Below are positions 584 to 12,835 of a stretch of 64,000 nucleotides of DNA, piece after piece. Position numbers and translations under genes: made by a program. Numbering within the stretch: the stretch's first letter is position 1; each line of letters starts with the position of its first letter. This stretch comes from Octopus bimaculoides (taxonomy: Eukaryota), in the NCBI RefSeq assembly GCF_001194135.2, contig NC_069001.1, forward strand, positions 1,814,374 to 1,878,373. The letters are read 5' to 3'. The notes under the pieces are model-generated. The model searched no databases. It was given only the letters and a program-made list of their open reading frames with translations, and had not been told where the DNA came from.

Positions 584-719
584 ATTGTAGAATTCTTCAC
601 CTTGACGATGGAATTCTTCAGAATCATATTCTGCAATAAACATTTTAATGACACGGTTTCTGTTGAACTTGATTATGTTCTTTGTCAAAAATGCAGGACT
701 GATTTGCTGGGCAGACTCT
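584..719 (-). CDS. AFMID: Kynurenine formamidase exon 9 (gene continues off the left edge)
   Basis: tacag|A GAG TCT...TAC AAT|gtaag; ESAQQISPAFLTKNIIKFNRNRVIKMFIAEYDSEEFHRQGEEFYN matches AFMID DSPEFHRQS with the catalytic Asp; 136 nt, phase 2 to 0. Confidence 0.9.
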
Positions 720-1354
720 CTGTACAAATAAACGAATAAACAAAAAAAATAATGAACTTAAAAAAAAAATAATAATTAGAAATGTTGATTGAGTAGACAC
801 TCAGCGGGGTTCACAGAGGAAGGTTGTAGGGGTGCTGTAGCATGGCCACAGTTCATTAGCTGAAACTAGATCGAATCAAATGAATCCTTTTTGAGTTTGG
901 ACATTAAAAATCTGCTAAAAACTTGATGTATGCAACTGAAACAAAACTAAATTGTAATACCATTTATGTATCATATTTGATGTTTACACACCATTGAAAG
1001 ATTTGATACTGTAGTTTTTGTCTGAGAGAAAATCATTTCATAAGCATATTGTGTCTATGAATATTTTGGTGTGCCAGTGTCTTTAGACAGCACAGCTCCT
1101 TGTCCACATGCTTTTACCTTGGACTATAGTGTGCCACAACCTTGTCTTACTGGAGTGTGGCACATCCCCTACAGTGTGCCACAAACCTATCCTACTACAG
1201 TGTGACAATAGACCCAGGGTGATACACGTTCACCTTACACTAGTGTGCCAGTAGACAAAATGTAGCGTCACACTTCCGCCCCACCCACCCCCGCCTCACC
1301 CATTCCCACCCCAGTAATAGATACAAAACTTTAAATAACAGCTTTCGTACTTAC

Positions 1355-1433
1355 TCAGTCATTTTAAGAGGTTTGTTGACGCTTGTTTGCACAAGAGGTC
1401 GAAGGTCATAGACACCGCTCACTGGGAAGACAC
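1355..1433 (-). CDS. AFMID: AFMID exon 8
   Basis: ttcag|GT...ACT GA|gtaag; (G)VFPVSGVYDLRPLVQTSVNKPLKMT(E), matching SGVFDLEP; 79 nt. Confidence 0.92.
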
Positions 1434-1789
1434 CTGAAATATTGGATCATAGTCGTTGTCATCTTCACCATCATCATCACCACTACCATCATCATCATCA
1501 TCACTAGCATTTTCTAAGTTTCTCAAATTAATGGCTATAGGAGTAGCACTACAGCTCTAGCCTACCATTCCTGTAAAAGCCTGTATCTAGTGTTTAAGAT
1601 TTTGTTTCAAGTATGTCAGGTATGTAAATAGTAACAAGCTCTCCTACTTTAGCTCTCCCATCATAAGTACCCACCATGCTGACATTAAATGTGTCGTAAA
1701 TACTTTTCACATAAACAGATTGTCAGTGTTGAAGCCATTGTCATCATCACTGTTTTAACACTTACTTTTCCATTCCATTGTATACTCAA

Positions 1790-1935
1790 GCACAGTGGTT
1801 AAGAAGCTTGCTTCACAAACGTGTTTTGGTGTTCAATTCCACCACGTGGCACCTTGAGCAAGTGTTGTCTGTTATTGCCCTGGGCCAACTAAAGCATTGT
1901 GAATGGAGTTCGTAGACAAAAACTGATTGAAGCCC
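1790..1935 (+). mobile_element. tRNA-headed SINE family A; other copies near 8660-9060(-), 9415-9610, 19560-19690, 22150-22300, 27170-27525(-), 30575-30700, 39970-40110, 41340-41765(-), 46690-46985, 55400-55560, 58645-59050, 61880-62090(-)
   Basis: A-box-like TGGTTAAG and B-box-like GGTTCAGTCC head followed by conserved cgtggcaccttgggcaagtgtcttct body, repeated many times in both orientations; boundaries approximate. Confidence 0.8.
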
Positions 1936-2388
1936 ATCATACATGTATGGTTTTGCATATGTGTGTATGTGTGATGTGGTGTGGTGTGTGTGTGTGTGTT
2001 TGTGAGTATGTGTGTGTCTATGCTTGTGCATGTGTGTGTGTGTTTATATGCGTGTATATGTATATATGCGTGCTCTTTTGTCCTGACATTGTCTTGGCAT
2101 TGCATAATGGCAGCAAACAAGCTTGGCTCATTTCCAATCTTGCATGGAAAACATGTGTGGCCAGGGGAAAATCTGAGCAAACTTGAAAACAAGTAAGAGT
2201 TGGCAATTGAAAGGGCATCTGGCAGTAAAAAAATCTGCCTCAAAGAATTCCATCTAACCTGTGCAAGTTTTGGAAGGTGGACATTAGAATGGTGACAACA
2301 ATGATGATGATGATGATGATGACAACAATGACTCCTTTTATGAACTGTCATAAAAGTAAGGGGACAAAATAAAAATCCCTTCTCTTAC

Positions 2389-2489
2389 CCTTGAATAAAG
2401 AAGAATCAACACCTTCTGCTTGCCAGTCGACAGTGAGCATCATGGCTGCCAAGTGACCTCCTGCAGAATGTCCACACACATACACACCT
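2389..2489 (-). CDS. AFMID: AFMID exon 7 (nucleophile elbow)
   Basis: ttcag|A GGT...AAG G|gtaag; GVYVCGHSAGGHLAAMMLTVDWQAEGVDSSLFK with GHSAG catalytic Ser; 101 nt. Confidence 0.95.
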
Positions 2490-2847
2490 CTGAAATTACG
2501 GATATTAACAATTCTATTAATTCATGAAAGATTTAAATAACTGGATGCGTACACTCACAACCTGAACCAGTTGAGTGGTACAATGTCTAGATGTTATGGC
2601 ACACAAAATAAAAAAAAATAAAAGATATTCATATGTCCACTGATGTAATGATTCTTGCGATCCATGAGCAGGGAAGAATGTGTGTGTGTGGTGGGGGGTG
2701 TCACTGTGTGTGTGTGTGTGTGTGGTTGCATATATTTAGAGATAGATAGATAGATACATACATGCATAGACAAATAGATTGATACATATGTAAGTATGTG
2801 TGAAATATGTCCAACGTTAAATGCTGGATTCACCAGAATGAACCCAC

Positions 2848-2926
2848 CTTGATCCACGATCCTTGGCCAATTTCAAGACATAAGCGACGCTCTTCTTCAC
2901 CTCTTCAACAATTTGCTCCATGGTTC
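2848..2926 (-). CDS. AFMID: AFMID exon 6
   Basis: ttaag|GA ACC...TCA AG|gtggg; (G)TMEQIVEEVKKSVAYVLKLAKDRGS(R); 79 nt, phases fit both neighbours. Confidence 0.9.
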
Positions 2927-3189
2927 CTTAATAAACATTTCAAATATTAAATTATCCATTAGACATAACAGCAATTTCGCGAGTGATACATGTTTTACAC
3001 ACACACACACACACGTTCCTGCTCCCTCCCCTACTCACATCATTTCTAAATGCAGTGAACCAGTGGTTCGTCCATGGAACCCTTTATGAAACAATGTTTT
3101 TATTTTAAAAAAAACAAAATTCCTGACCTTCCTCACCCCCGTCCTCATCAAAGAAAAAAAAAAAAGAAATTAAAAGTCTGATTACTTAC

Positions 3190-3275
3190 CATGAGGTGCA
3201 ATGCTGTAACCGATTGGACATACGATTCCACCCATTTTCACGATAGGCTTAACCATATATGATGATAATTCACGT
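3190..3275 (-). CDS. AFMID: AFMID exon 5
   Basis: tccag|A CGT...CAT G|gtaag; RELSSYMVKPIVKMGGIVCPIGYSIAPH; 86 nt. Confidence 0.9.
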
Positions 3276-3400
3276 CTGGAATAATTAGATAACTCTAATT
3301 AATTACTTTATTTATTTTATTAAAATTCAATTGGTTTATCTCTCTTTCTCTCTTTCTCTCTCTCTCTCTATATATATATATGTGTGTATCTACCTATCTG

Positions 3401-3446
<46 letters not shown>

Positions 3447-3777
3447 TACATACGTACATACATACATACATACATACACACACATATATATATATATATA
3501 TATAATTAGATTGGAGCCTGGTGTAGCCATCTGGTTGCACCAGTCCTCAGTCAAATCGTCCATGGAAAGCGGACGTTAATCGATTATGAGGATGATGATG
3601 ATATATATATATATAAAGAAATTTAGATTCAAGGTGAATATGGTACTTAAGTTTAGGCACCAGAATTAAGTACGGTATTATCCATACAGTTTAAAATGAG
3701 GTGATTAAAGTCAAAATAAGCAACAAAGATATCCAAAGTTAATGCAGAAAGATAAACATAAATAAAACATTACTCAC

Positions 3778-3826
3778 CCTAAAAGTTGCCAGTAACCGCC
3801 ATGGATATAGACTAAGATAGGGGCCA
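3778..3826 (-). CDS. AFMID: AFMID exon 4 (oxyanion motif)
   Basis: tgcag|TG GCC...TTA GG|gtgag; APILVYIHGGYWQLL with HGGYW; 49 nt. Confidence 0.93.
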
Positions 3827-4059
3827 CTGCAAAGAAAAGGGTAAAATAAATTATGTTTTTAGGGTGTTTATTAGGAAAAAGAGAGACTAAGACAAGTTTT
3901 TGATGTGTGTGTGAGAGTGAGAGAGAGAGAAAGAAAGAGAAAGAGAGAGAGAGAGAGAGAGAAGGAGAGAGAGAGAGTGAGAAATTGTGTTCTTAGACAG
4001 AATCTCACATTTTTTTTTTTTTTACCATTCTAGAATAAGATGAGAAAAGGTTGTCATAC

Positions 4060-4164
4060 CCTTGGCGGCAGTCTTCTGGCCGAATATGTCCAGCTTGTGT
4101 CTCTCGGCATCACCAATCTTTATTCCCAACTCGCAATCAATACAAGATTTTGCCTCAGCACTTT
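4060..4164 (-). CDS. AFMID: AFMID exon 3 (first exon shared by both 5' cassettes)
   Basis: ttctag|AA AGT...AAG G|gtatg; SAEAKSCIDCELGIKIGDAERHKLDIFGQKTAAK; 105 nt, phase 1 to 1. Confidence 0.88.
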
Positions 4165-4873
4165 CTAGAAAAACAGAAAATGTCCAAAATGATCATCATC
4201 ATCATCATCATCATCATCAATACCATTGCCATTGTTATCATTGTTGTCATCGTCATCATCATTCTCATCATCGTCGTCGTCGTCGTCGTCATCATCAATG
4301 ACAATAATAATATAGCAAGGCTTAGATTCGAAACCGTGTTGGTTTTGTAACTAGGTTGATGTTACATCAGATCAGATGATTTGCTCATCTCATTAGCAAT
4401 GTCGTCCAGTGTTATCAGAAGTTTCTATGTTCCCATGTAAATGGTGGCTATAAGGACAGCAGTGTGACCAAAGACACGAGAGAGGAGGGAGAGGCAGACA
4501 CAGAGAGCATGTCCTGAAGAAGATGGGTTCCTTGGTTTGCTATTTGACCTTTGGTTAAAGGAATCACAGACTATGAAGGACAAGGTAGTTTCCTGCCCCT
4601 CTCATGAAGCCGTTCTTATCTAACATGAACTCATCTATGAATTCCATTTACAATTGGCAGACTGCAATACGACCCTGGGAAGCATCTGGATGATTATCTC
4701 AATTCTGTGACGTGCTTCTCGAACAGCATTAGGAGTTGGTTCTAAGATAAGATGGTGTCTTAGAAATGGTGACAAGGACGACAACAATAACAACTATGGC
4801 CGCAGCAACAAGAATGACATCCCCACTGATACCACCAACAAGAATGACAACAACAATATTCTGTGGATCTTAC

Positions 4874-4964
4874 GTTCTTTAATGAATTCTACATGTGAGG
4901 TCAACACCTCGGATGCTGTCATTCGGTGGTTCCATTGACTGGGAGAATATTGTCTTTCAAGTTC
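4874..4964 (-). CDS. AFMID: AFMID exon 2A
   Basis: ttcag|GAA...GAA C|gtaag; ELERQYSPSQWNHRMTASEVLTSHVEFIKE, matching ELENQYCPSRW; 91 nt. Confidence 0.92.
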
Positions 4965-5014
4965 CTGAATGCAAGAAAAGAGATTATTGAAATAATGAAA
5001 GAGAGGGAGAGAAA

Positions 5015-5067
<53 letters not shown>

Positions 5068-5373
5068 GGAGAGAGTTTACATCTGTATCCATGTTTCCGT
5101 ACATCATTTTTGACCTAAAATAGTCCTGTTCCTGTCACGGACATTACCTTCAACTTAATTAATACAACTATTTAGATTTCTATACATGGGTACAACATTG
5201 TCATCATCATCATCACCATCATCATTTTCACTTCCCTTTTTTCCATGTTTGCATGGATTGGATGGAATTTATTAAGACAGAGTTTCTACAGTGAGATGAT
5301 TTTTCTACAACCAGACACCCTTCTTGTTGTCAACCTTCACCAAGTTAGGTAATCTTTTCTCATGGTCAGACAC

Positions 5374-5441
<68 letters not shown>

Positions 5442-5795
5442 GTATACATGTATATATATGTATACATATATAAACAGGAGTTACACCACAGTCATTTTGT
5501 GATCTTTGCTACCCTCGAATCTATTAACCAATTTATTTTGTCCGAGTTATTTGTTAATTAGGAGAAAATAAATACATATAATAAAAAATATATATATATA
5601 TATATGTGTGTATGTAGATAGATAGATAGATAGGAAACAGTCATTTTTGCTTGTAAGAAATCAATGTAATTTTTTTTAACTTTAAAAAGTACCATCATAT
5701 CTTTTTTTAAAACAACATCAAATCAATGTCTGTTTGTAATGGGGCAAAAAACAAAAAAAGAAACCCAGAGTATTTTACAAAGTGCTTCCTCTTAC

Positions 5796-5831
5796 TTTCA
5801 AATCAAAACTCCTCCATTTTTCTGATTCCAT
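5796..5831 (-). CDS. AFMID: AFMID exon 1A (coding part)
   Basis: ATG GAA TCA GAA AAA TGG AGG AGT TTT GAT TTG AAA|gtaag = MESEKWRSFDLK; phase 0 joins exon 2A. Confidence 0.8.
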
Positions 5832-5880
5832 TGTTTGTATTCTGACAGTGAGAGTCACTGTGAATATAAATAATGTTGGG

Positions 5881-5945
5881 GGACGGCAGTTTGATAAAAC
5901 ACCAAACACCTTAGCTGTCCCTGTCTTATCAGAGATTGGCTGATG
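5881..5945 (-). promoter_or_regulatory. Putative AFMID promoter A: CCAAT box plus two GATA sites
   Basis: Minus strand cagCCAATctctGATAAGac and plus strand ttGATAAa, 50-110 nt upstream of the exon 1A ATG; block recurs near 9880-9910 and 11240-11300. Confidence 0.5.
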
Positions 5946-6173
5946 GACAGCAGCCACCTACACACCATGTCTGCTACCAGGCATGCATATATACACACAT
6001 ATACATACATATATATACACTAATTATGCTTTGTGTCATATGTGAATAGCCTTATTTGTACACACTAATATCCCTTCATTCACATATATATATACATACA
6101 CACACATACTATATATGTCCTGTCTTTCTCTCTCCTCTCTTTCCCTCTCACTTCTCTCTTTCTCCTCTCTATC

Positions 6174-6213
<40 letters not shown>

Positions 6214-6884
6214 TACACTGGTTTATATGCTTTTCACATATATACATACTATACACACATTAACTGTTTTATGTCACACACACACACACATTACACATCT
6301 CCTCACACATTAAGGTTTTAGTTATCTTATAAAAGGATTAACAAGAAGAAGAAGAAGAAGTACATGAATAAAAGATCCCATTATCACATGTTTTAGTTTT
6401 AAGTATCCTCCACTTATTCCTAACACATTCCCCATAATATGTTATTAACATTTTTTAAATTTATTTATTGTGAGGTCTTCTGTTGTTTTTTGCTTGTGTT
6501 TTTCGTTTTTGCTTTTAAATTTATTCTTCATTTTATTGTTGTTTTATTGTCTGCTTGCCATAAAGTTTCACCCTTTCAGATAACCAGCCGGCTTGGCCAC
6601 CTTAAGTACTGTTTAATTGTCTGTGTATGTGTGTATGTTTGTGTTGCTACATGCACATGTAACTGCATACATTTATACATACATACATACATACATACAT
6701 ACATACATACACACACATGATATCTAGGACTATAAAAATCTACAAAACTGTCTCAAGATTTGAAGGATGACAGTTAAATCCTGATACTTTCCTCCACAAC
6801 CTCGTTAGGAAATCGTTGGGCAGTCAAAATTGACCATAAATCAAAAAGGGAAAGAAAAGGCATGCATACCTACATACATGCCCA

Positions 6885-7050
6885 GCGGATGTTAGCATAA
6901 AGAGAATACCTTCGCTGAACTATTGAGAAATCTGCAGTTACTCTCTCCAGATTGCAAGTTCAGGTTTATACCTGTAATTATTGGGGTCCTGGGATGTGTA
7001 ACACACTGCCTGAATACCAATCTTGAGAAATGAGGCTTCTCAAAACCATG
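6885..7050 (+). mobile_element. Non-LTR retrotransposon fragment, restriction-enzyme-like endonuclease region
   Basis: KENTFAELLRNLQLLSPDCKFRFIPVIIGVLGCVTHCLNTNLEK* resembles the KxxKY...PxxIGxxG REL tail; in-frame stop. Confidence 0.5.
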
Positions 7051-7052
7051 AC

Positions 7053-7085
<33 letters not shown>

Positions 7086-7713
7086 ATAATAATAAAAAAA
7101 AAATAACATCAGCTTCAATAACAAAAACAATAATAATAATGGTTTCTAATTTAGGCACAAGGCCAGTAATTTTGTGGGGTTAGAGCTAATCAATTAAATC
7201 AACTAACGAAGTACTTGACTGGTACTTTATTTCATTAACTCTGGAGGAATGAAAGGCAAAGTTGACCTTGGTAGGAGTTGAACTCAGAAAGGAAAGAGAT
7301 GGAACAAAAACCACAAGGCATTTGTTCCAAAGCTCTAAATAAATAAATAAATATATAAATAAAATCATTAATAAAAACAATGAACAACCATAACAAGGAA
7401 TCTATAGAAAAATTGGTAGGAATTTATTGCCAGCAAAAACTACAAAAGACACACAAGGTTTCTAAGCGAAGCTATTAACAACATCAATTAATCTAAGAAC
7501 AAAGGCCAAGCTACGATAACAATGATGGCAAACAGCATCTCTACATATCAACAACAAAAGTTCAGTTACCAAACAATTAAATCACTGAAGTTAATTACTC
7601 AGAGATGCTGTCATTATTATTTTTGGTTTCTGTGTGTCATCATTGTCATCTTCATCACTGTCATCATTATTATCAGCATCATCATCGTTGTCATCCTCCT
7701 CTGCATTCCATTT

Positions 7714-7885
7714 TAACAAAGGATTTATGCATGTGGAGAGGGTCAGCAAATTTGTCCCTAAGGTGCTGGTGGAGCAGCAGACACAACTCCACATGGAAAT
7801 CATTGAGGACATGCTGGACTGTGCAAACCATGGCCCAGACTTCATAAAGACCATCATCACTAGTGACGAGACCTGGCTTTATGGT
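7714..7885 (+). mobile_element. Mariner transposase fragment (first catalytic Asp region)
   Basis: RVSKFVPKVLVEQQTQLHMEIIEDMLDCANHGPDFIKTIITSDETWLYG matches mariner WVP...IITGDETW. Confidence 0.85.
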
Positions 7886-7972
7886 CTCTGCTCGATGCGT
7901 TTGGTCATCTGGTGTGAAAATGAAAATTGAACAAACACAATAACAACAACAACAATATTGTACGTGTCTTAC

Positions 7973-8063
7973 TTTCTTTCAGAAATGCCATGTAAGTGGC
8001 CATCACATCAATTGTTGTCTTTCGGTGGCTCCATTCGAGCGAAGAATATTGTCTTTCAAGTTC
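7973..8063 (-). CDS. AFMID: AFMID exon 2B (duplicated alternative exon)
   Basis: tccag|GAA...GAA A|gtaag; ELERQYSSLEWSHRKTTIDVMATYMAFLKE; same length (91 nt) and phases as exon 2A, no stop. Confidence 0.8.
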
Positions 8064-8094
8064 CTGGATATAAGAAAAGATATTATTGAAACAA

Positions 8095-8380
8095 TGAGAG
8101 AGAGGGGGGGGAGTAAGTGAGAGAGACATAGAGAGAGTGAGTAAGAGAGAGAGAGGGGAGTAAGTGAGAGAGAGAATAAGAGAAAGAGTGAGTAAGAGAA
8201 AGAGTGGGGAGTAAGTGAGTGAGACAGAGAGAGAAAGAGAGTAAGAGAGAGTGGGGAGTAAGTGAGACAGAGAGAGAGTGAGTAAGAGAGACAGAAAGAA
8301 AGAGAGTAAGAGAGCGAGTGGAGAGTAAGTGAGAGAGAGAGAGGGAATAAAGGAGAGTGAGAGAGAGAGAGAGAGAGACT
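8095..8380. repeat. Purine-rich minisatellite (GAGAGAGTGGGGAGTAAGT-like units)
   Basis: Repeated AGTAAG/GAGAGA units; the homologous position in cassette A has a shorter (GA)n tract at about 5000-5070. Confidence 0.85.
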
Positions 8381-9763
8381 GTTTCCATTTGTATCCATGT
8401 TTCCATGAATTATTTTTTTGACCTTAAATATCCATGTTCCTGCCAGAGACCTCACCTTTAACTTAACTAAATGCAACTCTTTAGACTGCTAAACATCCAA
8501 ACACACGCACACACTCAAATACACATTCACACATACATACACACACACACACACACTCAAACACATTCACACAAACACACACACACCCACAAACACACAC
8601 ACTCAAGCACACACACACCATGTTAGCAGTACTATTAAATCACTTTTTAAGGTTATTTCTTTATTCTTTTACATGTTTCAGTTATTTGACTGTGGCCATG
8701 CTGGAGCACTGCTTTAATGGGTTTTATTCAAAGAAATCAACCCCAGGACTTATTTTTTAAGCCTAATACTTACTCTATCAGTCTCTTTTGCTGAACTATT
8801 AAGTTACAGAGATGTAAACACACCAACACCGGTTGTCAAGCAGTGATGGGGAACAAACACAGACACAAAGACTCACACACATAGATATATATACGTATAT
8901 ACACAAGCTTCTTTCAGTTTCCATCAACCAAATCCATTCACAAGGCTTTGGTCAGGCTGAGGGTGTAGAGAGAAGACACTTGCCCAAGGTGCAGCACAGC
9001 GGGTCTGAACCCAGAACCATGTGGTTGAAAAGCAAGCTTCTTATCTCACAGCTACACCTGCGGCTATCTCTACAAATTTTCTATAGAAATTAGAGTCAAC
9101 AGTGACTTGTTACAATGTTTTATATCTGAATGTGTCTCATGTAAATAATGTGATTGAAGATGGAAAGATAGGTAATGGGTGTATATGCATATTTCAGGAA
9201 TTCTTGCTCCATCATCAGTGCCAGAATCCAACTGCACATTCACCCATTACCGAATTTTCTATCTTCTCTTTTTTTTGTCTTTGCTTATATTTAATTTTGT
9301 TTGTGGCAACAGGAAAACTAATGTTTTTGTAACAGTAAGAAAGCAGTATCTTTTTTAAAATATCATAATAAGATTTTAGTTTTGAAACAGCAAAAAAATA
9401 TAAAAGCAAGACAGTATGCTTCCCAACCACATGGTTCCAGGTTCAGTCCCACTGCATGGCACCTTAAGCAAGTGTCTTCTTAGCAGTTCAGCAAAAGAAG
9501 CTGATAGAATAAGTACCAGGCTTAAAAAAAAAAAAGATAGATAGATACTGGAGTTGATTCCTTCTGTTAAAAATTCTTCAAGGCAGTGCACCAGTATGGC
9601 CACAGCCTAACAAATGGAACAAGTAAAAGATAAACAATAAAAACTATTATATCCTCTCTTTCTCATTTTATTTTAAATGCTCACAAGTCAATGCCTATTT
9701 GTAATAGGGGCCAAAGAAAATCCCTTCCAAAACCACTGCATTTTACAGCCTTCCTCTTCTTAC

Positions 9764-9811
9764 CTTTAAGTCAAAAAGTTTCCATTTTTCTGATTCTGCT
9801 GCCATTTTCAT
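9764..9811 (-). CDS. AFMID: AFMID exon 1B (coding part)
   Basis: ATG AAA ATG GCA GCA GAA TCA GAA AAA TGG AAA CTT TTT GAC TTA AAG|gtaag = MKMAAESEKWKLFDLK; phase 0. Confidence 0.78.
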
Positions 9812-11160
9812 TGAATATCTGTGTGGACGGACGACTGTACGTTTAACTGTAGCAGAAGATAGAAGTTGTAATACTTTTGAGTGTGTCCCTATCTTATCAG
9901 AGACTGGTTAATGACCTGCACCGTCCCACACACACACACACTTATATTTCATGTCATATGTAAAAACACTTGTCTACACACAACCACATCCATCCATTCA
10001 CATATACATACACATGACAGAACATATAAATATAAATATATACATATATGTCACTCTCTCTCTCTCACACACACAAACATCGACACATGCACACACATTG
10101 TCCTTCACTCCTAGACATTGAACTTTTATCTCACTCATAAAAAGATTAACAACAACAACAATAATAATGATGGTTTCAAATTTTGCTGCATCAATTTTGA
10201 GGCAAGGGGATAAATCAATTACTCAACCCCAGTGTTCAACTGGTACTTATTCTATTGACCCCAAAAGGATGAAAGGCACAGTCGACCTCGGTGGAATTTG
10301 AACTCAGAACATATAAGCATTTCATCCAGTGGGCTGCTACTGTTGATGATGATGATGATGATATAGCACCACTGATACATCGATGTATGAGATTCCCAAG
10401 TGATGGCAACACTGAAGAAGTGGGTGTTTTCACACTTTTTTTTACCATAAGAGAGATTTTTTTCACCACAGTAACTGCAGCATATTTGCTTTTAGCAGTT
10501 GAAATATGTGACAAACATATTTCAACTAATCTAAATTCTGGTGGTTAATAAAAGAATTAATTATCATTATTATTATCTTTTAAAACAGTGTAGAAAAATA
10601 GTCTTAATTTTGTTTTTAAACAGTTAGAAAGCGGTAAGATAGTATTTTTTTTTTAATTAAAAGATTCTAGTGTTTTCTTTTCCTTTTGCAACAAAGAAAA
10701 ACAATTGCTTTTGTAACAATAAGAAAACAGTGTAACAAAATGTAGTTCTTTAAATGGTGAAAAATAGTTAGAAAGTAGAGTAAGTTTTAATTGTAAGAAA
10801 TATGTGTGACCTTTTTAAAACTTCAAAAAATGAGACATCTTTGTTTTTAAACAGCTTCAAATCAATGTCTATTTGTAACAGGACAAAAAACCCCCAAATA
10901 ATCCAGAGAAACAGTGTCTTATGAACTGTCCCTTTAGCACTTGAAACATTTGATTTGGCCAAATCTGGCTCAAATATGTTCCAACTGACCAGACCGGGCC
11001 TCATACACCAACCCAATATTGTCATTCTTAAGATAAACAGTCACATCATGGTTATCTTGAAGCCACGAAAATAATGCATGATTAATTAAAATGCATGATT
11101 AATTGAAAACAATGTGAATAAATAAGCATCACGTTGACAGGATTATTTGAAGAGTGAAGG

Positions 11161-11310
11161 GTTAAATAAACAAAACTCTCCAATTTCTGATTCTGTCGTT
11201 GTCTGACAGTGAGAATGACTGTGAATATAATGTTGGGGAACGGCAGTTTGATAAAACATCAACTACCTTAACTGTCCCTGTCTTATCAGAGATTGGCTGA
11301 TGGTCAGCAA
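11161..11310 (-). pseudogene. Third, degenerate copy of AFMID promoter/exon 1
   Basis: Aligns by eye to 5800-5950 (ctgacagtgaga...ggcagtttgataaaaca...ctgtccctgtcttatcagagattggctgatgg) but has no ATG or splice donor, and the exon 1 frame is broken. Confidence 0.7.
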
Positions 11311-11594
11311 ACATCATCATCATCATCATCATCATCATCATAATCACCACCACCACCACCACCACCACCGCCATCATCATCATCACCACCACCACCATCA
11401 TTATTATCCTCATCAACATTTAACATCCATTTTCCATGCTGGCATGGGTTGGACAACTTGTCAATCAGTTAGTCGAATCTGGAATATTTAACGGGTAGGT
11501 ACATAAACTATGTCTACACCGTTACACCGTTTCTACTGCTATAATTGGCGCTAAAGAAATTATACGGTTTGTTGTTTCTATTAAGTGGAAGAAA

Positions 11595-11698
11595 ATGAAA
11601 CCCGTGGCCCCTGGTGAAGTGATCTATCGTGAATCGCCCTACGTCCATGTGGTGTCTGACAAAGAACTAAAGAACCATTGTAGTTCTTGTTTCAAAAG
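11595..11698 (+). CDS. SMYD3: SMYD3-like exon 1
   Basis: MKPVAPGEVIYRESPYVHVVSDKELKNHCSSCFK, S-sequence plus start of MYND; AG|gtaat; 104 nt. Confidence 0.85.
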
Positions 11699-11763
11699 GT
11701 AATCACAGACCGTCATCCGCATCATACACTGGTTTAATTACAGACTTCTGTTCCTCCCATCTA

Positions 11764-12100
11764 CCGACTTTGGTTTCCTATAACTTTCTTACAAATATAT
11801 ATCTTTTAATGAAATTTTCCAGATGTATATTCTAGGTATTGTAGATTGTGATTATATTAGAAAGAAAAAATAAAAATTTGAGATTTCATTTCCCCTCTCT
11901 GATCGGACTTTTGTTAAAGGCAATTATTTTGGTTAATGAAAATTTCCAGATACATTTTAGATGGTATAGATTACGAATGTATTTTTAAAACAGAGTTTTT
12001 ATCAAGATCACCGTACTGTACACCCACGAAAATGTATTTTGAGGAAATTTCATTAAAAAAATCTGCACTTTTGAGAAAGTTATAAGAAAACAAAGTCGGG
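11764..12100. mobile_element. MITE with long imperfect terminal inverted repeats; relatives at 28363-28557 and about 33750-33935
   Basis: ccgactttggtttcctataactttct ... agaaagttataagaaaacaaagtcgg. Confidence 0.7.
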
Positions 12101-12312: not shown

Positions 12313-12835
12313 GTAAATAATCCCTTAAAACTGTCCTTTGCTTTCATCTATTTTTTTGTTTTCATTAATTACTCTTATTTCATCATCATCATCATTGTAT
12401 AACACCTGTGTCCCATGCTGGTGTGGGTTAAATGGGTTGACAAGATCCAATCTATTGTTGGACTGCGTCAAATTCCAAATATGTTATTGCATAGTTTCTA
12501 TGGCTGGATGCCCTTCCCAGACACAATCCATCTTTTATGATAGAGGTACAGCCTGTCAAGTATATTAGTGGCTGAATATTCCACTAGCATCTCTACTCTT
12601 AATTCAACTCTCACATAGAATCTGCATAATGCAGAGAGTATAACGAAAGCCATGCCTTTGAATTAGATGTATAACCCACCAAATGGGCTTCTGTATAGTT
12701 TCCATGTAATTGAGTGGCACCCACCCACTAAAATTCCTGGGCCTGTCTCAAAATTTCAAAATGTTATTGTGATTTTATGAATTACAATGAATTAACATGA
12801 AACATTTCAACATGTTTGCTATCTTCCATTTCCAG

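What the first reader, a model, noticed from the sequence alone, without database searches (positions are those of the whole stretch)
4874..9910. Duplicated promoter+exon1+exon2 cassette gives kynurenine formamidase two possible N-termini
Seen: two complete 5' cassettes on the minus strand. A = exon 1A 5796-5831 plus exon 2A 4874-4964. B = exon 1B 9764-9811 plus exon 2B 7973-8063. Both have an ATG, canonical splice sites, 91-nt second exons and a phase-1 exit compatible with shared exon 3 (4060-4164). Flanking intron sequence is also duplicated (e.g. 5080-5180 vs 8385-8490). Established: AFMID converts N-formylkynurenine to kynurenine, a step toward the ommochromes that colour cephalopod chromatophores and eyes. 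Inference: alternative promoters could give tissue-specific isoforms (e.g. skin/eye vs digestive gland) with different N-terminal lids on one catalytic core.
Basis: partly seen in the sequence, partly recalled or inferred. Interest (0 to 1): 0.75.

Follow-up and report, generated by a model that had tools for sequence, protein, structure and literature searches.

The report
Duplicated 5' start cassette of octopus AFMID
The Octopus bimaculoides kynurenine formamidase gene really does carry two tandemly duplicated "promoter + exon 1 + exon 2" start modules (plus a third, dead one) that give two alternative N-termini, but both isoforms are already in the public annotation and this is an ordinary kind of gene architecture.

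Summary
The window is Octopus bimaculoides and is identical to assembly GCA_001194135.2. AFMID (kynurenine formamidase) lies on the minus strand, with one copy of exons 3-9 and two homologous 5' cassettes: A (1A 5831-5796, 2A 4964-4874) and B (1B 9811-9764, 2B 8063-7973). Homology is collinear from about 350 nt upstream of the ATG to about 35 nt past exon 2 (61-85% identity, E down to 1e-44), too diverged for an assembly artefact.

Both N-termini are already annotated. RefSeq isoform X2 uses A and X1 uses B. X3 uses B and skips exons 7-8.

New here:
- A third copy, C (about 11340-10764), has a dead exon 1 and lies beside the divergent zf-MYND gene.
- C has orthologues in O. vulgaris and O. sinensis; B does not.
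- Site patterns place the B duplication at or before that species split, so B was probably lost there.
- Including both 91-nt exons 2 gives a premature stop, as in mutually exclusive exons. A 1B-2A hybrid would be in frame.
- B replaces 3 of 7 near-invariant N-terminal residues. Its intactness is unlikely under neutral decay (1-10%).

Tissue specificity and a "lid" effect remain untested. It is a new member of a known kind, of low to moderate interest.

The parts
5832..5965 (-). Promoter-proximal region of cassette A, with the CCAAT and GATA motif CAGCCAATCTCTGATAAGACAGGGACAG starting at 5942
   Evidence: It is homologous to the regions upstream of exon 1B and of copy C. Promoter activity is inferred, not measured.
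5796..5831 (-). Exon 1A (36 nt, MESEKWRSFDLK), donor AAA|gtaaga
   Evidence: It matches the N-terminus of RefSeq isoform X2, P0001.
4874..4964 (-). Exon 2A (91 nt, phase 0 in, phase 1 out)
   Evidence: It has orthologues in O. vulgaris and O. sinensis.
9812..9933 (-). Promoter-proximal region of cassette B. The motif is TAACCAGTCTCTGATAAGATAGGGACAC at 9910: the CCAAT box is changed to CCAGT and the GATA site is kept.
   Evidence: Identity to promoter A is 61-66%.
9764..9811 (-). Exon 1B (48 nt, MKMAAESEKWKLFDLK), donor AAG|gtaaga. Its ATG is not homologous to the ATG of exon 1A.
   Evidence: The RefSeq X1 CDS starts here.
7973..8063 (-). Exon 2B (91 nt, same phases as 2A). It is 71% nt and 50% aa identical to 2A, and the first 21 nt are identical.
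   Evidence: It is present in RefSeq X1 and X3.
4060..4164 (-). Shared exon 3 (105 nt), the acceptor for both 2A and 2B
584..3826 (-). Shared exons 4-9: 3826-3778, 3275-3190, 2926-2848, 2489-2389 (GHSAG nucleophile), 1433-1355 and 719-584. Exons 10-11 lie 1.4-2.0 kb beyond the left end of the window.
10764..11340 (-). Copy C, a pseudo-cassette. Its promoter motif (starting at 11299) is 28/28 identical to that of A. The exon-1 remnant (about 11193-11164) has no ATG, a frameshift and no GT donor. A 240-nt insert follows, then intron-1 homology at 10891-10764.
   Evidence: Orthologues exist in O. sinensis (L004 2680-3112, 82-83%) and O. vulgaris (L001 2301-2377, 93.5%).
8660..9069 (-). SINE-type repeat inserted in intron 1 of cassette B. 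Together with an expanded CT-rich microsatellite at 8100-8380, it accounts for the longer B intron (1700 vs 831 nt).
   Evidence: Many copies occur in L001 and L004 at 77-82% identity.
7634..7930 (+). Antisense ORF fragment lying just past the 3' end of A/B homology (homology ends at about 7937, the ORF at 7930). By eye it looks transposase-like (…SDETW…).
   Evidence: There is no Pfam match and no other copy in the window or loci, so its identity is unconfirmed.
11436..11836 (+). 5' end of the divergently transcribed zf-MYND gene. It is 93% identical to O. vulgaris and lies about 140-300 nt from the promoter motif of copy C.

Best explanation
Serial tandem duplication of the 5' module of AFMID (upstream region, exon 1, intron 1, exon 2) produced three copies in the order C-B-A, upstream of one set of constant exons 3-11.

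Copy A is the conserved, canonical start. Copy B kept an ATG, both donors, its acceptor and the reading frame. It works as a second, promoter-linked 5' cassette: transcripts that start upstream of 9811 splice 1B>2B>exon 3, skipping 1A and 2A. The product is a full-length kynurenine formamidase whose first 46 residues replace the 42 residues of isoform A. Copy C lost its exon 1 before the O. bimaculoides / O. vulgaris split.

The two exons 2 behave as a mutually exclusive pair. Each is 91 nt, so including both, or neither, shifts the frame.

The duplication itself, the splice compatibility and the annotation of both isoforms are shown. Inferred points are that each copy has its own active promoter, that B mRNA is productive in vivo, and that the N-termini differ in function.
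For: - Collinear paralogy runs from about -350 nt to +35 nt past exon 2.
- Exons 3-9 are single copy.
- All splice sites are canonical and the phases match.
- RefSeq XP_014782304.1 (X1) is B plus the full enzyme, XP_014782305.1 (X2) is A, and XP_052831417.1 (X3) starts with B. The X1 CDS begins exactly at 9811.
- Double inclusion 1B-2B-2A-3 hits a stop two codons into 2A. Skipping exon 2 shifts the frame.
- The duplication is old. Outside the promoter, B shares 9 sites with A_bim only and 16 with A_vul only. In the wider alignments the counts are 36 vs 30, p=0.54. There are 126 B-unique sites.
- Under neutral decay at the observed non-coding divergence, the chance that splice sites, frame and ORF all survive is 0.4-10%. 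Copy C shows what unconstrained decay looks like.
- dN/dS between A_bim and B is 0.33, Fisher p=0.014.
- AlphaFold2 gives the same topology and confidence for both isoforms, pLDDT 94.3 vs 94.0.
- The best structural match of isoform B is Drosophila KFase, TM-score 0.84.
Against: - No RNA reads could be inspected here. Expression of B rests on automated annotation, whose evidence I could not see.
- B is absent from O. vulgaris and O. sinensis, so it is dispensable in close relatives.
- Exon 2B has diverged as fast as its flanking introns: B-unique sites are 21% vs 13-28%.
- The A_vul-B dN/dS of 0.53 is not significant, p=0.17.
- B replaces 3 of the 7 near-invariant N-terminal positions, P20S, S21L and H36Y in A numbering.
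- Exon 2A keeps a good acceptor, so B transcripts could splice unproductively as 2B>2A.
- The AlphaFold result is weak evidence, because the alignment imposes the family fold.
Confidence: 0.6

Rival explanations
1. Cassette B is a decaying, functionally irrelevant relic. It is transcribed at noise level and was picked up by annotation pipelines, and its open frame has survived by chance.
For: - B is absent from O. vulgaris and O. sinensis, which manage with A alone.
- Nucleotide divergence of exon 2B equals that of the flanking introns.
- Three near-invariant residues are replaced.
- The CCAAT box is lost in promoter B and the ancestral ATG is lost.
- Sister copy C is already dead.
- Survival by chance is not negligible, up to about 10%.
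Against: - All six splice-site bases, the frame and the ORF are intact after about 20-30% divergence, with P of 0.004-0.10.
- A_bim-B dN/dS is 0.33, p=0.014.
- Two in-frame replacement ATGs were gained.
- Isoform X1 kept the same protein accession alongside X3, whose much later accession number suggests a newer annotation build, and X3 also starts at B.
Confidence: 0.28
2. Transcription from the B (or C) start is mainly regulatory. It would interfere with promoter A or feed nonsense-mediated decay through 2B>2A splicing, rather than make a distinct enzyme.
For: - B transcription must run through promoter A.
- The 2B>2A product carries an immediate stop codon.
- RefSeq X3, which starts at B, lacks the catalytic-serine exon.
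Against: - This does not need, and does not explain, the intact 46-codon frame and the donor of exon 2B.
- RefSeq X1 is a complete enzyme.
Confidence: 0.08
3. The two cassettes are an assembly artefact: uncollapsed haplotypes or a misjoin.
For: None beyond the general risk in repeat-rich cephalopod assemblies.
Against: - The copies are only 61-85% identical, with different intron sizes and insertions.
- Protein accessions with 2015-era numbers (X1, X2) and one with a much later number (X3) all map to this locus, and the window equals the chromosome assembly.
- Copy C has orthologues in two other species.
Confidence: 0.01

Closest known systems
Multiple-variable-first-exon clusters (UGT1A, clustered protocadherins, GCNT2), as described in PMC1885805 and PMC3325998
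   Same: There is a tandem array of homologous 5' coding units. Each is preceded by its own duplicated upstream region, and each is joined to one common set of downstream constant exons. The result is proteins with alternative N-terminal parts on a shared core.
   Different: There are only two live units plus one dead one. The variable unit is two exons, not one. The internal exon 2A keeps an acceptor, so choice cannot rest on cap-proximal donor selection alone. The variable part is a 42-46-residue helical segment, not a whole substrate-binding or ectodomain.
Tandem-duplicated mutually exclusive exons (PMC9013439, PMC9741552, PMC5740500)
   Same: Exons 2A and 2B are homologous, of identical length (91 nt) and in the same phase. 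The length is not a multiple of three, so double inclusion or double skipping breaks the frame.
   Different: The choice is coupled to promoter use. Exon 2B is not even present in pre-mRNAs that start at promoter A. The pair is young and lineage-restricted (absent in O. vulgaris and O. sinensis), whereas most described events are ancient.
Kynurenine formamidase / arylformamidase (AFMID; Drosophila KFase, PDB 4E11)
   Same: The fold is alpha/beta-hydrolase fold-3, with the HGGYW oxyanion motif, the GHSAG nucleophile elbow and DHF histidine. PDB 4E11 matches at E 5e-21 and Foldseek gives TM 0.84.
   Different: From my own knowledge, not tested here: no described AFMID has a tandemly duplicated 5' cassette. 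Mouse Afmid is known for a bidirectional promoter shared with Tk1, whereas here the divergent neighbour is a zf-MYND gene.

Membership tests
Kynurenine formamidase (AFMID, alpha/beta-hydrolase fold-3) | HGGxW oxyanion-hole motif and GxSxG nucleophile elbow | tested here: met
   HGGYW lies in exon 4 and GHSAG in exon 7. These columns are invariant or nearly so in 37 homologues.
Kynurenine formamidase (AFMID, alpha/beta-hydrolase fold-3) | Closest solved and annotated relatives are kynurenine formamidases | tested here: met
   PDB 4E11 KFase matches at E 5.3e-21 over residues 12-251. Foldseek top hits are 4E15, 4E11 and 4E14 at TM 0.84. Homologues are named kynurenine formamidase across molluscs and vertebrates. 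Pfam gives BD-FAE and Abhydrolase_3.
Kynurenine formamidase (AFMID, alpha/beta-hydrolase fold-3) | Hydrolysis of N-formylkynurenine by each isoform | not testable with these tools
   This needs an enzyme assay of recombinant X1 and X2.
Multiple-variable-first-exon gene architecture | Tandem homologous 5' coding units, each with its own duplicated upstream region | tested here: met
   Collinear homology includes 100-350 nt upstream of each ATG and a shared CCAAT/GATA motif. Promoter activity itself was not tested.
Multiple-variable-first-exon gene architecture | Each variable unit splices to the same first constant exon | tested here: met
   Phases are compatible. RefSeq X1 and X2 both join exon 3. 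Junction reads were not inspected.
Multiple-variable-first-exon gene architecture | Downstream variable exons lack an acceptor, so only the cap-proximal donor is used | tested here: not met
   Exon 2A has a strong acceptor (tcttttcttgcattcag|G), so B transcripts face a 2B>2A versus 2B>3 choice.
Tandem-duplicated mutually exclusive exons | Adjacent homologous exons of similar length and identical phase | tested here: met
   Exons 2A and 2B are both 91 nt, phase 0 to 1, and 71% nt and 50% aa identical.
Tandem-duplicated mutually exclusive exons | Inclusion of both or neither disrupts the reading frame | tested here: met
   1B-2B-2A-3 gives a stop after two codons. 1B-3 and 1A-3 are frameshifted.
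Tandem-duplicated mutually exclusive exons | Exactly one of the pair is present in mature mRNAs, chosen by splicing from one pre-mRNA | tested here: inconclusive
   The three annotated isoforms each contain exactly one exon 2. However, choice is tied to the start site, and no reads were available to test for 1B-2A or 2B-2A products.
Decayed pseudo-exon (non-functional duplicate) | Loss of start codon, frame or splice sites | tested here: not met
   Not met for B, where all are intact. Met for copy C, which has no ATG, a 1-2 nt deletion and a deleted donor, defects shared with O. sinensis.

The most novel reading that the evidence does not exclude
Cassette B is a selectively maintained, lineage-specific second start of AFMID. 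Its rewired promoter (GATA kept, CCAAT lost) and altered N-terminal helices would give O. bimaculoides a separately regulated kynurenine formamidase isoform, for example for ommochrome-producing tissues. O. vulgaris and O. sinensis would have lost it and instead changed their single promoter. This would be a caught-in-the-act example of birth, death and hand-over of 5' modules (C dead beside zf-MYND, B alternative, A canonical).
Probability: 0.2. Interest if true: 0.45.

Novelty: new member of a known kind. Interest (0 to 1): 0.25.

Why it matters
If B is truly used, this is a compact and datable example of how tandem duplication of a promoter-plus-exons module creates alternative N-termini on a metabolic enzyme. 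It comes with a natural "knock-out" comparison, because O. vulgaris and O. sinensis lack B, and with a dead sister copy (C) as an internal control for neutral decay.

It touches the tryptophan-to-ommochrome pathway that colours cephalopod skin and eyes. However, nothing here links either isoform to pigmentation.

For annotation, it warns that a 1B-2A hybrid and a 2B-2A product with a premature stop are possible. It also shows that isoform X3 lacks the catalytic serine.

It changes no general principle, and the two isoforms have been in public databases since about 2015.

Tried and rejected
- **Short B-specific protein queries.** The 81-aa query and the 126-aa query returned nothing, although exact matches (P0004, P0121) exist in the same database. 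This is a limitation of the word index, not evidence of absence. It used two of the three searches, so no transcript-derived fragments could be sought.
- **Pfam on the N-terminal peptides alone** gave nothing useful.
- **The sigma-70 promoter and terminator scan** is meaningless for an animal gene and was discarded.
- **The Drosophila KFase structure paper** is not held, so the 'lid' role of the N-terminus rests on general knowledge of hormone-sensitive-lipase-family caps. It could not be measured, because model coordinates are not exposed.
- **Whole-gene tandem duplication** was rejected as a description of the present state, because exons 3-9 occur once.
- **Assembly artefact** was rejected, because the copies are 61-85% identical.
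- **A B orthologue** was sought in O. vulgaris, O. sinensis and Argonauta hians across the whole zf-MYND-AFMID intergenic region, by tblastn and by word-7 blastn. Only the paralogous A and C matches were found.
- **Recent gene conversion between A and C** in O. bimaculoides is suggested by the 28/28 identical motif. It is not supported overall, since A_bim-C_bim at 0.76 is about the same as A_vul-C_bim at 0.75.
- **The ORF after exon 2B** looked mariner-like by eye, but it has no Pfam match and no other copy.
All conclusions rest on database proteins retrieved later.

Full report
**What is there**

Reading the minus strand and extracting the claimed exons confirms every coordinate.
- Exon 1A is 5831-5796 (36 nt, ATG, donor AAA|gtaaga).
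- Exon 2A is 4964-4874 (91 nt).
- Exon 1B is 9811-9764 (48 nt, ATG, donor AAG|gtaaga).
- Exon 2B is 8063-7973 (91 nt).
- The shared exon 3 is 4164-4060 (105 nt).

All introns are GT-AG. Both exons 2 leave in phase 1, which is the phase exon 3 needs. The translations are MESEKWRSFDLK/ELERQYSPSQWNHRMTASEVLTSHVEFIKE/Q... for A and MKMAAESEKWKLFDLK/ELERQYSSLEWSHRKTTIDVMATYMAFLKE/K... for B.

A tblastn lead followed by manual splice-site reading gave the rest of the gene: exons 4-9 at 3826-3778, 3275-3190, 2926-2848, 2489-2389, 1433-1355 and 719-584. Each occurs only once in the window. The last two exons lie 1.4-2.0 kb beyond the left edge.

**Is the duplication real?**

Yes. blastn of 4000-7000 against 7001-11000 gives a collinear chain:
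- promoter region, 5965-5916 vs 9933-9884, 78%;
- exon 1 plus the start of the intron, 5828-5699 vs 9796-9665, 71%;
- distal intron 1, 5187-4994 vs 8496-8295, 77%, E 2e-36;
- exon 2 with flanks, 5074-4838 vs 8175-7937, 76%, E 2e-44;
- weaker matches out to 6359 vs 10167.

Homology stops about 35 nt after the exon 2 donor.

Unit B is about 2.2 kb and unit A about 1.5 kb. B is longer because of a SINE insertion (8660-9069) and an expanded CT-rich microsatellite.

At 61-85% identity per segment, the copies cannot be uncollapsed alleles or an assembly artefact.

**What gene and organism**

The spliced A protein matches Pfam BD-FAE and Abhydrolase_3 and the Drosophila kynurenine formamidase structure 4E11 at E 5e-21 over residues 12-251.

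It is 100% identical to 'kynurenine formamidase isoform X2 [Octopus bimaculoides]', XP_014782305.1. The window is base-identical to GCA_001194135.2, CM046621.1.

**The two N-termini are already annotated**

- XP_014782304.1, isoform X1 (P0121, 304 aa), is exactly 1B-2B plus the full enzyme. Its CDS starts at window position 9811.
- XP_052831417.1, isoform X3 (P0004, 244 aa), also starts with 1B-2B. It joins exon 6 to exon 9, an in-frame loss of 180 nt that removes the GHSAG serine.
- UniProt holds both X1 and X2 (A0A0L8GC20 and A0A0L8GC40).

So the central observation is correct but not new at the level of database records. I found no paper discussing it: only two papers contain both 'kynurenine formamidase' and 'octopus', and neither concerns isoforms. 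I could not see the RNA evidence behind the models. From my own knowledge, alternative variants in NCBI's pipeline normally need transcript support. That is an inference here.

**A third copy**

Comparison with O. vulgaris exposed copy C at about 11340-10764.
- Its promoter motif CAGCCAATCTCTGATAAGACAGGGACAG is 28/28 identical to that of A.
- Its exon-1 remnant has no ATG, is frameshifted and has lost the donor.
- After a 240-nt insert, intron-1 homology resumes (10891-10764 vs 5752-5626, 75%).

C has orthologues in O. sinensis (L004 2680-3112, 82-83%) and O. vulgaris (L001 2301-2377, 93.5%). The disabling deletions are shared with O. sinensis, so C died before these species split.

C lies about 140-300 nt from the 5' end of the divergent zf-MYND gene. 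It may now serve, or once have served, as a bidirectional promoter. This is inference.

**Distribution and age of B**

The synteny zf-MYND <> AFMID > DHHC is conserved in O. vulgaris and O. sinensis; the Argonauta hians locus shows zf-MYND and AFMID only.

The whole intergenic region is covered in each locus. B-specific pieces hit only the paralogous A and C sequences in O. vulgaris and O. sinensis, and nothing comparable in Argonauta.

Yet B is not a recent O. bimaculoides invention.
- Where A_bim and A_vul differ, B sides with each about equally: 36 vs 30, p=0.54. Outside the promoter the counts are 9 vs 16.
- B has 126 unique differences.
- A-B identity in introns (64-78%) is lower than A_bim-A_vul identity (about 82-83%).

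Under a rough clock, the duplication is at or before the species split, and B was lost in the O. vulgaris / O. sinensis lineage. In intron 1, B and C are similarly distant from A (71% and 75%). The promoter of B has diverged most (61-66%).

In the promoter, the asymmetry of 16 vs 1 reflects changes in the O. vulgaris A promoter. These include loss of the GATA core, TGATAAG to TGATATG.

**Is B maintained?**

The evidence is mixed.

For maintenance:
- All six splice-site bases, the frame and the ORF are intact. A neutral-decay simulation at the observed non-coding divergence and indel rate gives this a probability of 0.4-10%, depending on the branch length assumed.
- Nei-Gojobori dN/dS is 0.33 for A_bim-B (Fisher p=0.014). 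This is similar to 0.42 for A_bim-A_vul.
- The acceptor region and the first 21 nt of exon 2 (ELERQYS) are nearly or fully identical in A and B.
- The ancestral ATG is gone in B, but two in-frame ATGs lie 6 and 12 nt upstream of that position, where A_vul has ACA and ACG.

Against maintenance:
- Exon 2B has as many B-unique changes (21%) as its intronic flanks (13-28%).
- A_vul-B dN/dS is 0.53, p=0.17.
- B replaces three of the seven near-invariant N-terminal positions: P20S, S21L and H36Y in A numbering. P>S and H>Y also occur in other cephalopod sequences.
- Close relatives live without B.

AlphaFold2 predicts the same secondary-structure topology with equal confidence for both isoforms, pLDDT 94.3 and 94.0. 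The cassette encodes three short helices plus the first part of a long helix, H29-50 in A and H33-54 in B. The B model matches Drosophila KFase best, at TM 0.84. This is weak evidence, because the alignment drives the fold.

**How it most likely works**

Transcripts starting upstream of 9811 carry 1B and 2B and must skip the still-competent acceptor of 2A to reach exon 3.

Translating the alternatives gives:
- 1B-2B-3 is in frame.
- 1B-2B-2A-3 hits a stop two codons into 2A.
- Skipping exon 2 shifts the frame.

So exons 2A and 2B behave as a mutually exclusive pair policed by the reading frame, with the choice coupled to promoter choice. Transcripts starting at promoter A contain only 1A and 2A.

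The promoters differ in recognisable motifs: A has CCAAT plus GATA, while B has only GATA. That is compatible with different regulation but does not demonstrate it.

**Comparison with known systems**

The architecture is a small instance of the multiple-variable-first-exon design (UGT1A, clustered protocadherins, GCNT2; PMC1885805, PMC3325998). It is combined with a tandem-duplicated mutually exclusive exon pair (PMC9013439, PMC9741552, PMC5740500).

It differs from the first in having a two-exon unit whose downstream copy keeps an acceptor. It differs from the second in being promoter-coupled and evolutionarily young and patchy.

**Verdict**

The finding is a new member of a known kind whose isoforms are already in RefSeq and UniProt.

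The added value here is:
- the dead third copy;
- the evidence that B is old but lost in O. vulgaris and O. sinensis;
- the frame logic of the two exons 2;
- the mixed signal of constraint.

Interest is about 0.25.

Noticed in passing
window 10764-11340 (minus strand): A third, degenerate copy (C) of the AFMID promoter, exon 1 and start of intron 1. Its promoter motif is identical to that of A, but its exon 1 lacks an ATG, frame and donor. It lies about 140-300 nt from the 5' end of the divergent zf-MYND gene and has orthologues in O. vulgaris and O. sinensis. It may act as, or be a relic of, a bidirectional promoter.
   Followed up: yes
L002 (Argonauta hians) 10399-10477, 10662-10742, 12331-12411, 12527-12607; true exon 2 at 12726-12816: Intron 1 of Argonauta AFMID holds four extra copies (80-96% identical) of the acceptor plus the first ~51 nt of exon 2. 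They are embedded in a 'ccaccactatacta' satellite. This is an independent, young, partial duplication of the same exon, and the copies could act as decoy acceptors.
   Followed up: partly
window exons 7-8 (2489-2389, 1433-1355); protein P0004: RefSeq isoform X3 joins exon 6 directly to exon 9, an in-frame loss of 180 nt. This removes the GHSAG catalytic serine, so the annotated product would be an inactive enzyme. It is modelled with the B start.
   Followed up: partly
L001 9986 and L004 9890 (promoter A of O. vulgaris and O. sinensis): In the species that lack cassette B, the A promoter motif has changed: TGATAAG became TGATATG and GGGACAG became AGGGCC. Copies A, B and C in O. bimaculoides and copy C in O. 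vulgaris and O. sinensis keep the GATA core. In the promoter, B agrees with A_bim at 16 sites and with A_vul at 1.
   Followed up: partly
window 9793-9811 vs 5825-5831: The start codon of exon 1B is not homologous to that of exon 1A. The ancestral ATG position reads GCA in B, and two new in-frame ATGs lie 6 and 12 nt upstream of it, where O. vulgaris A has ACA and ACG.
   Followed up: partly
window 7634-7930 (+ strand): A 98-codon antisense ORF fragment (…DFIKTIITSDETWLYG…) lies just past the point where A/B homology ends. It looks transposase-like by eye, but has no Pfam match and no second copy in the window or in the three other loci.
   Followed up: partly
window 8660-9069, 9417-9634, 1795-2003, 339-518, 10190-10320; many sites in L001 and L004: Several families of short interspersed repeats, including tRNA-like SINEs ending in …ccaacccatgc(c/t)agcatggaaa…, pepper the introns and the intergenic region. 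One such tail overlaps the annotated CDS start of zf-MYND at 11436.
   Followed up: no
L001 (O. vulgaris) 2550-2870 and 10001-10132: A ~16-copy 20-bp minisatellite (gtgatctcatatcaagattg) truncates the O. vulgaris copy C. Separately, the O. vulgaris protein model starts with 'MTRAIK', although an intact exon 1A (MESEKWRSFDLK) is present at 10097-10132, as used in O. sinensis. This is probably an annotation difference.
   Followed up: no
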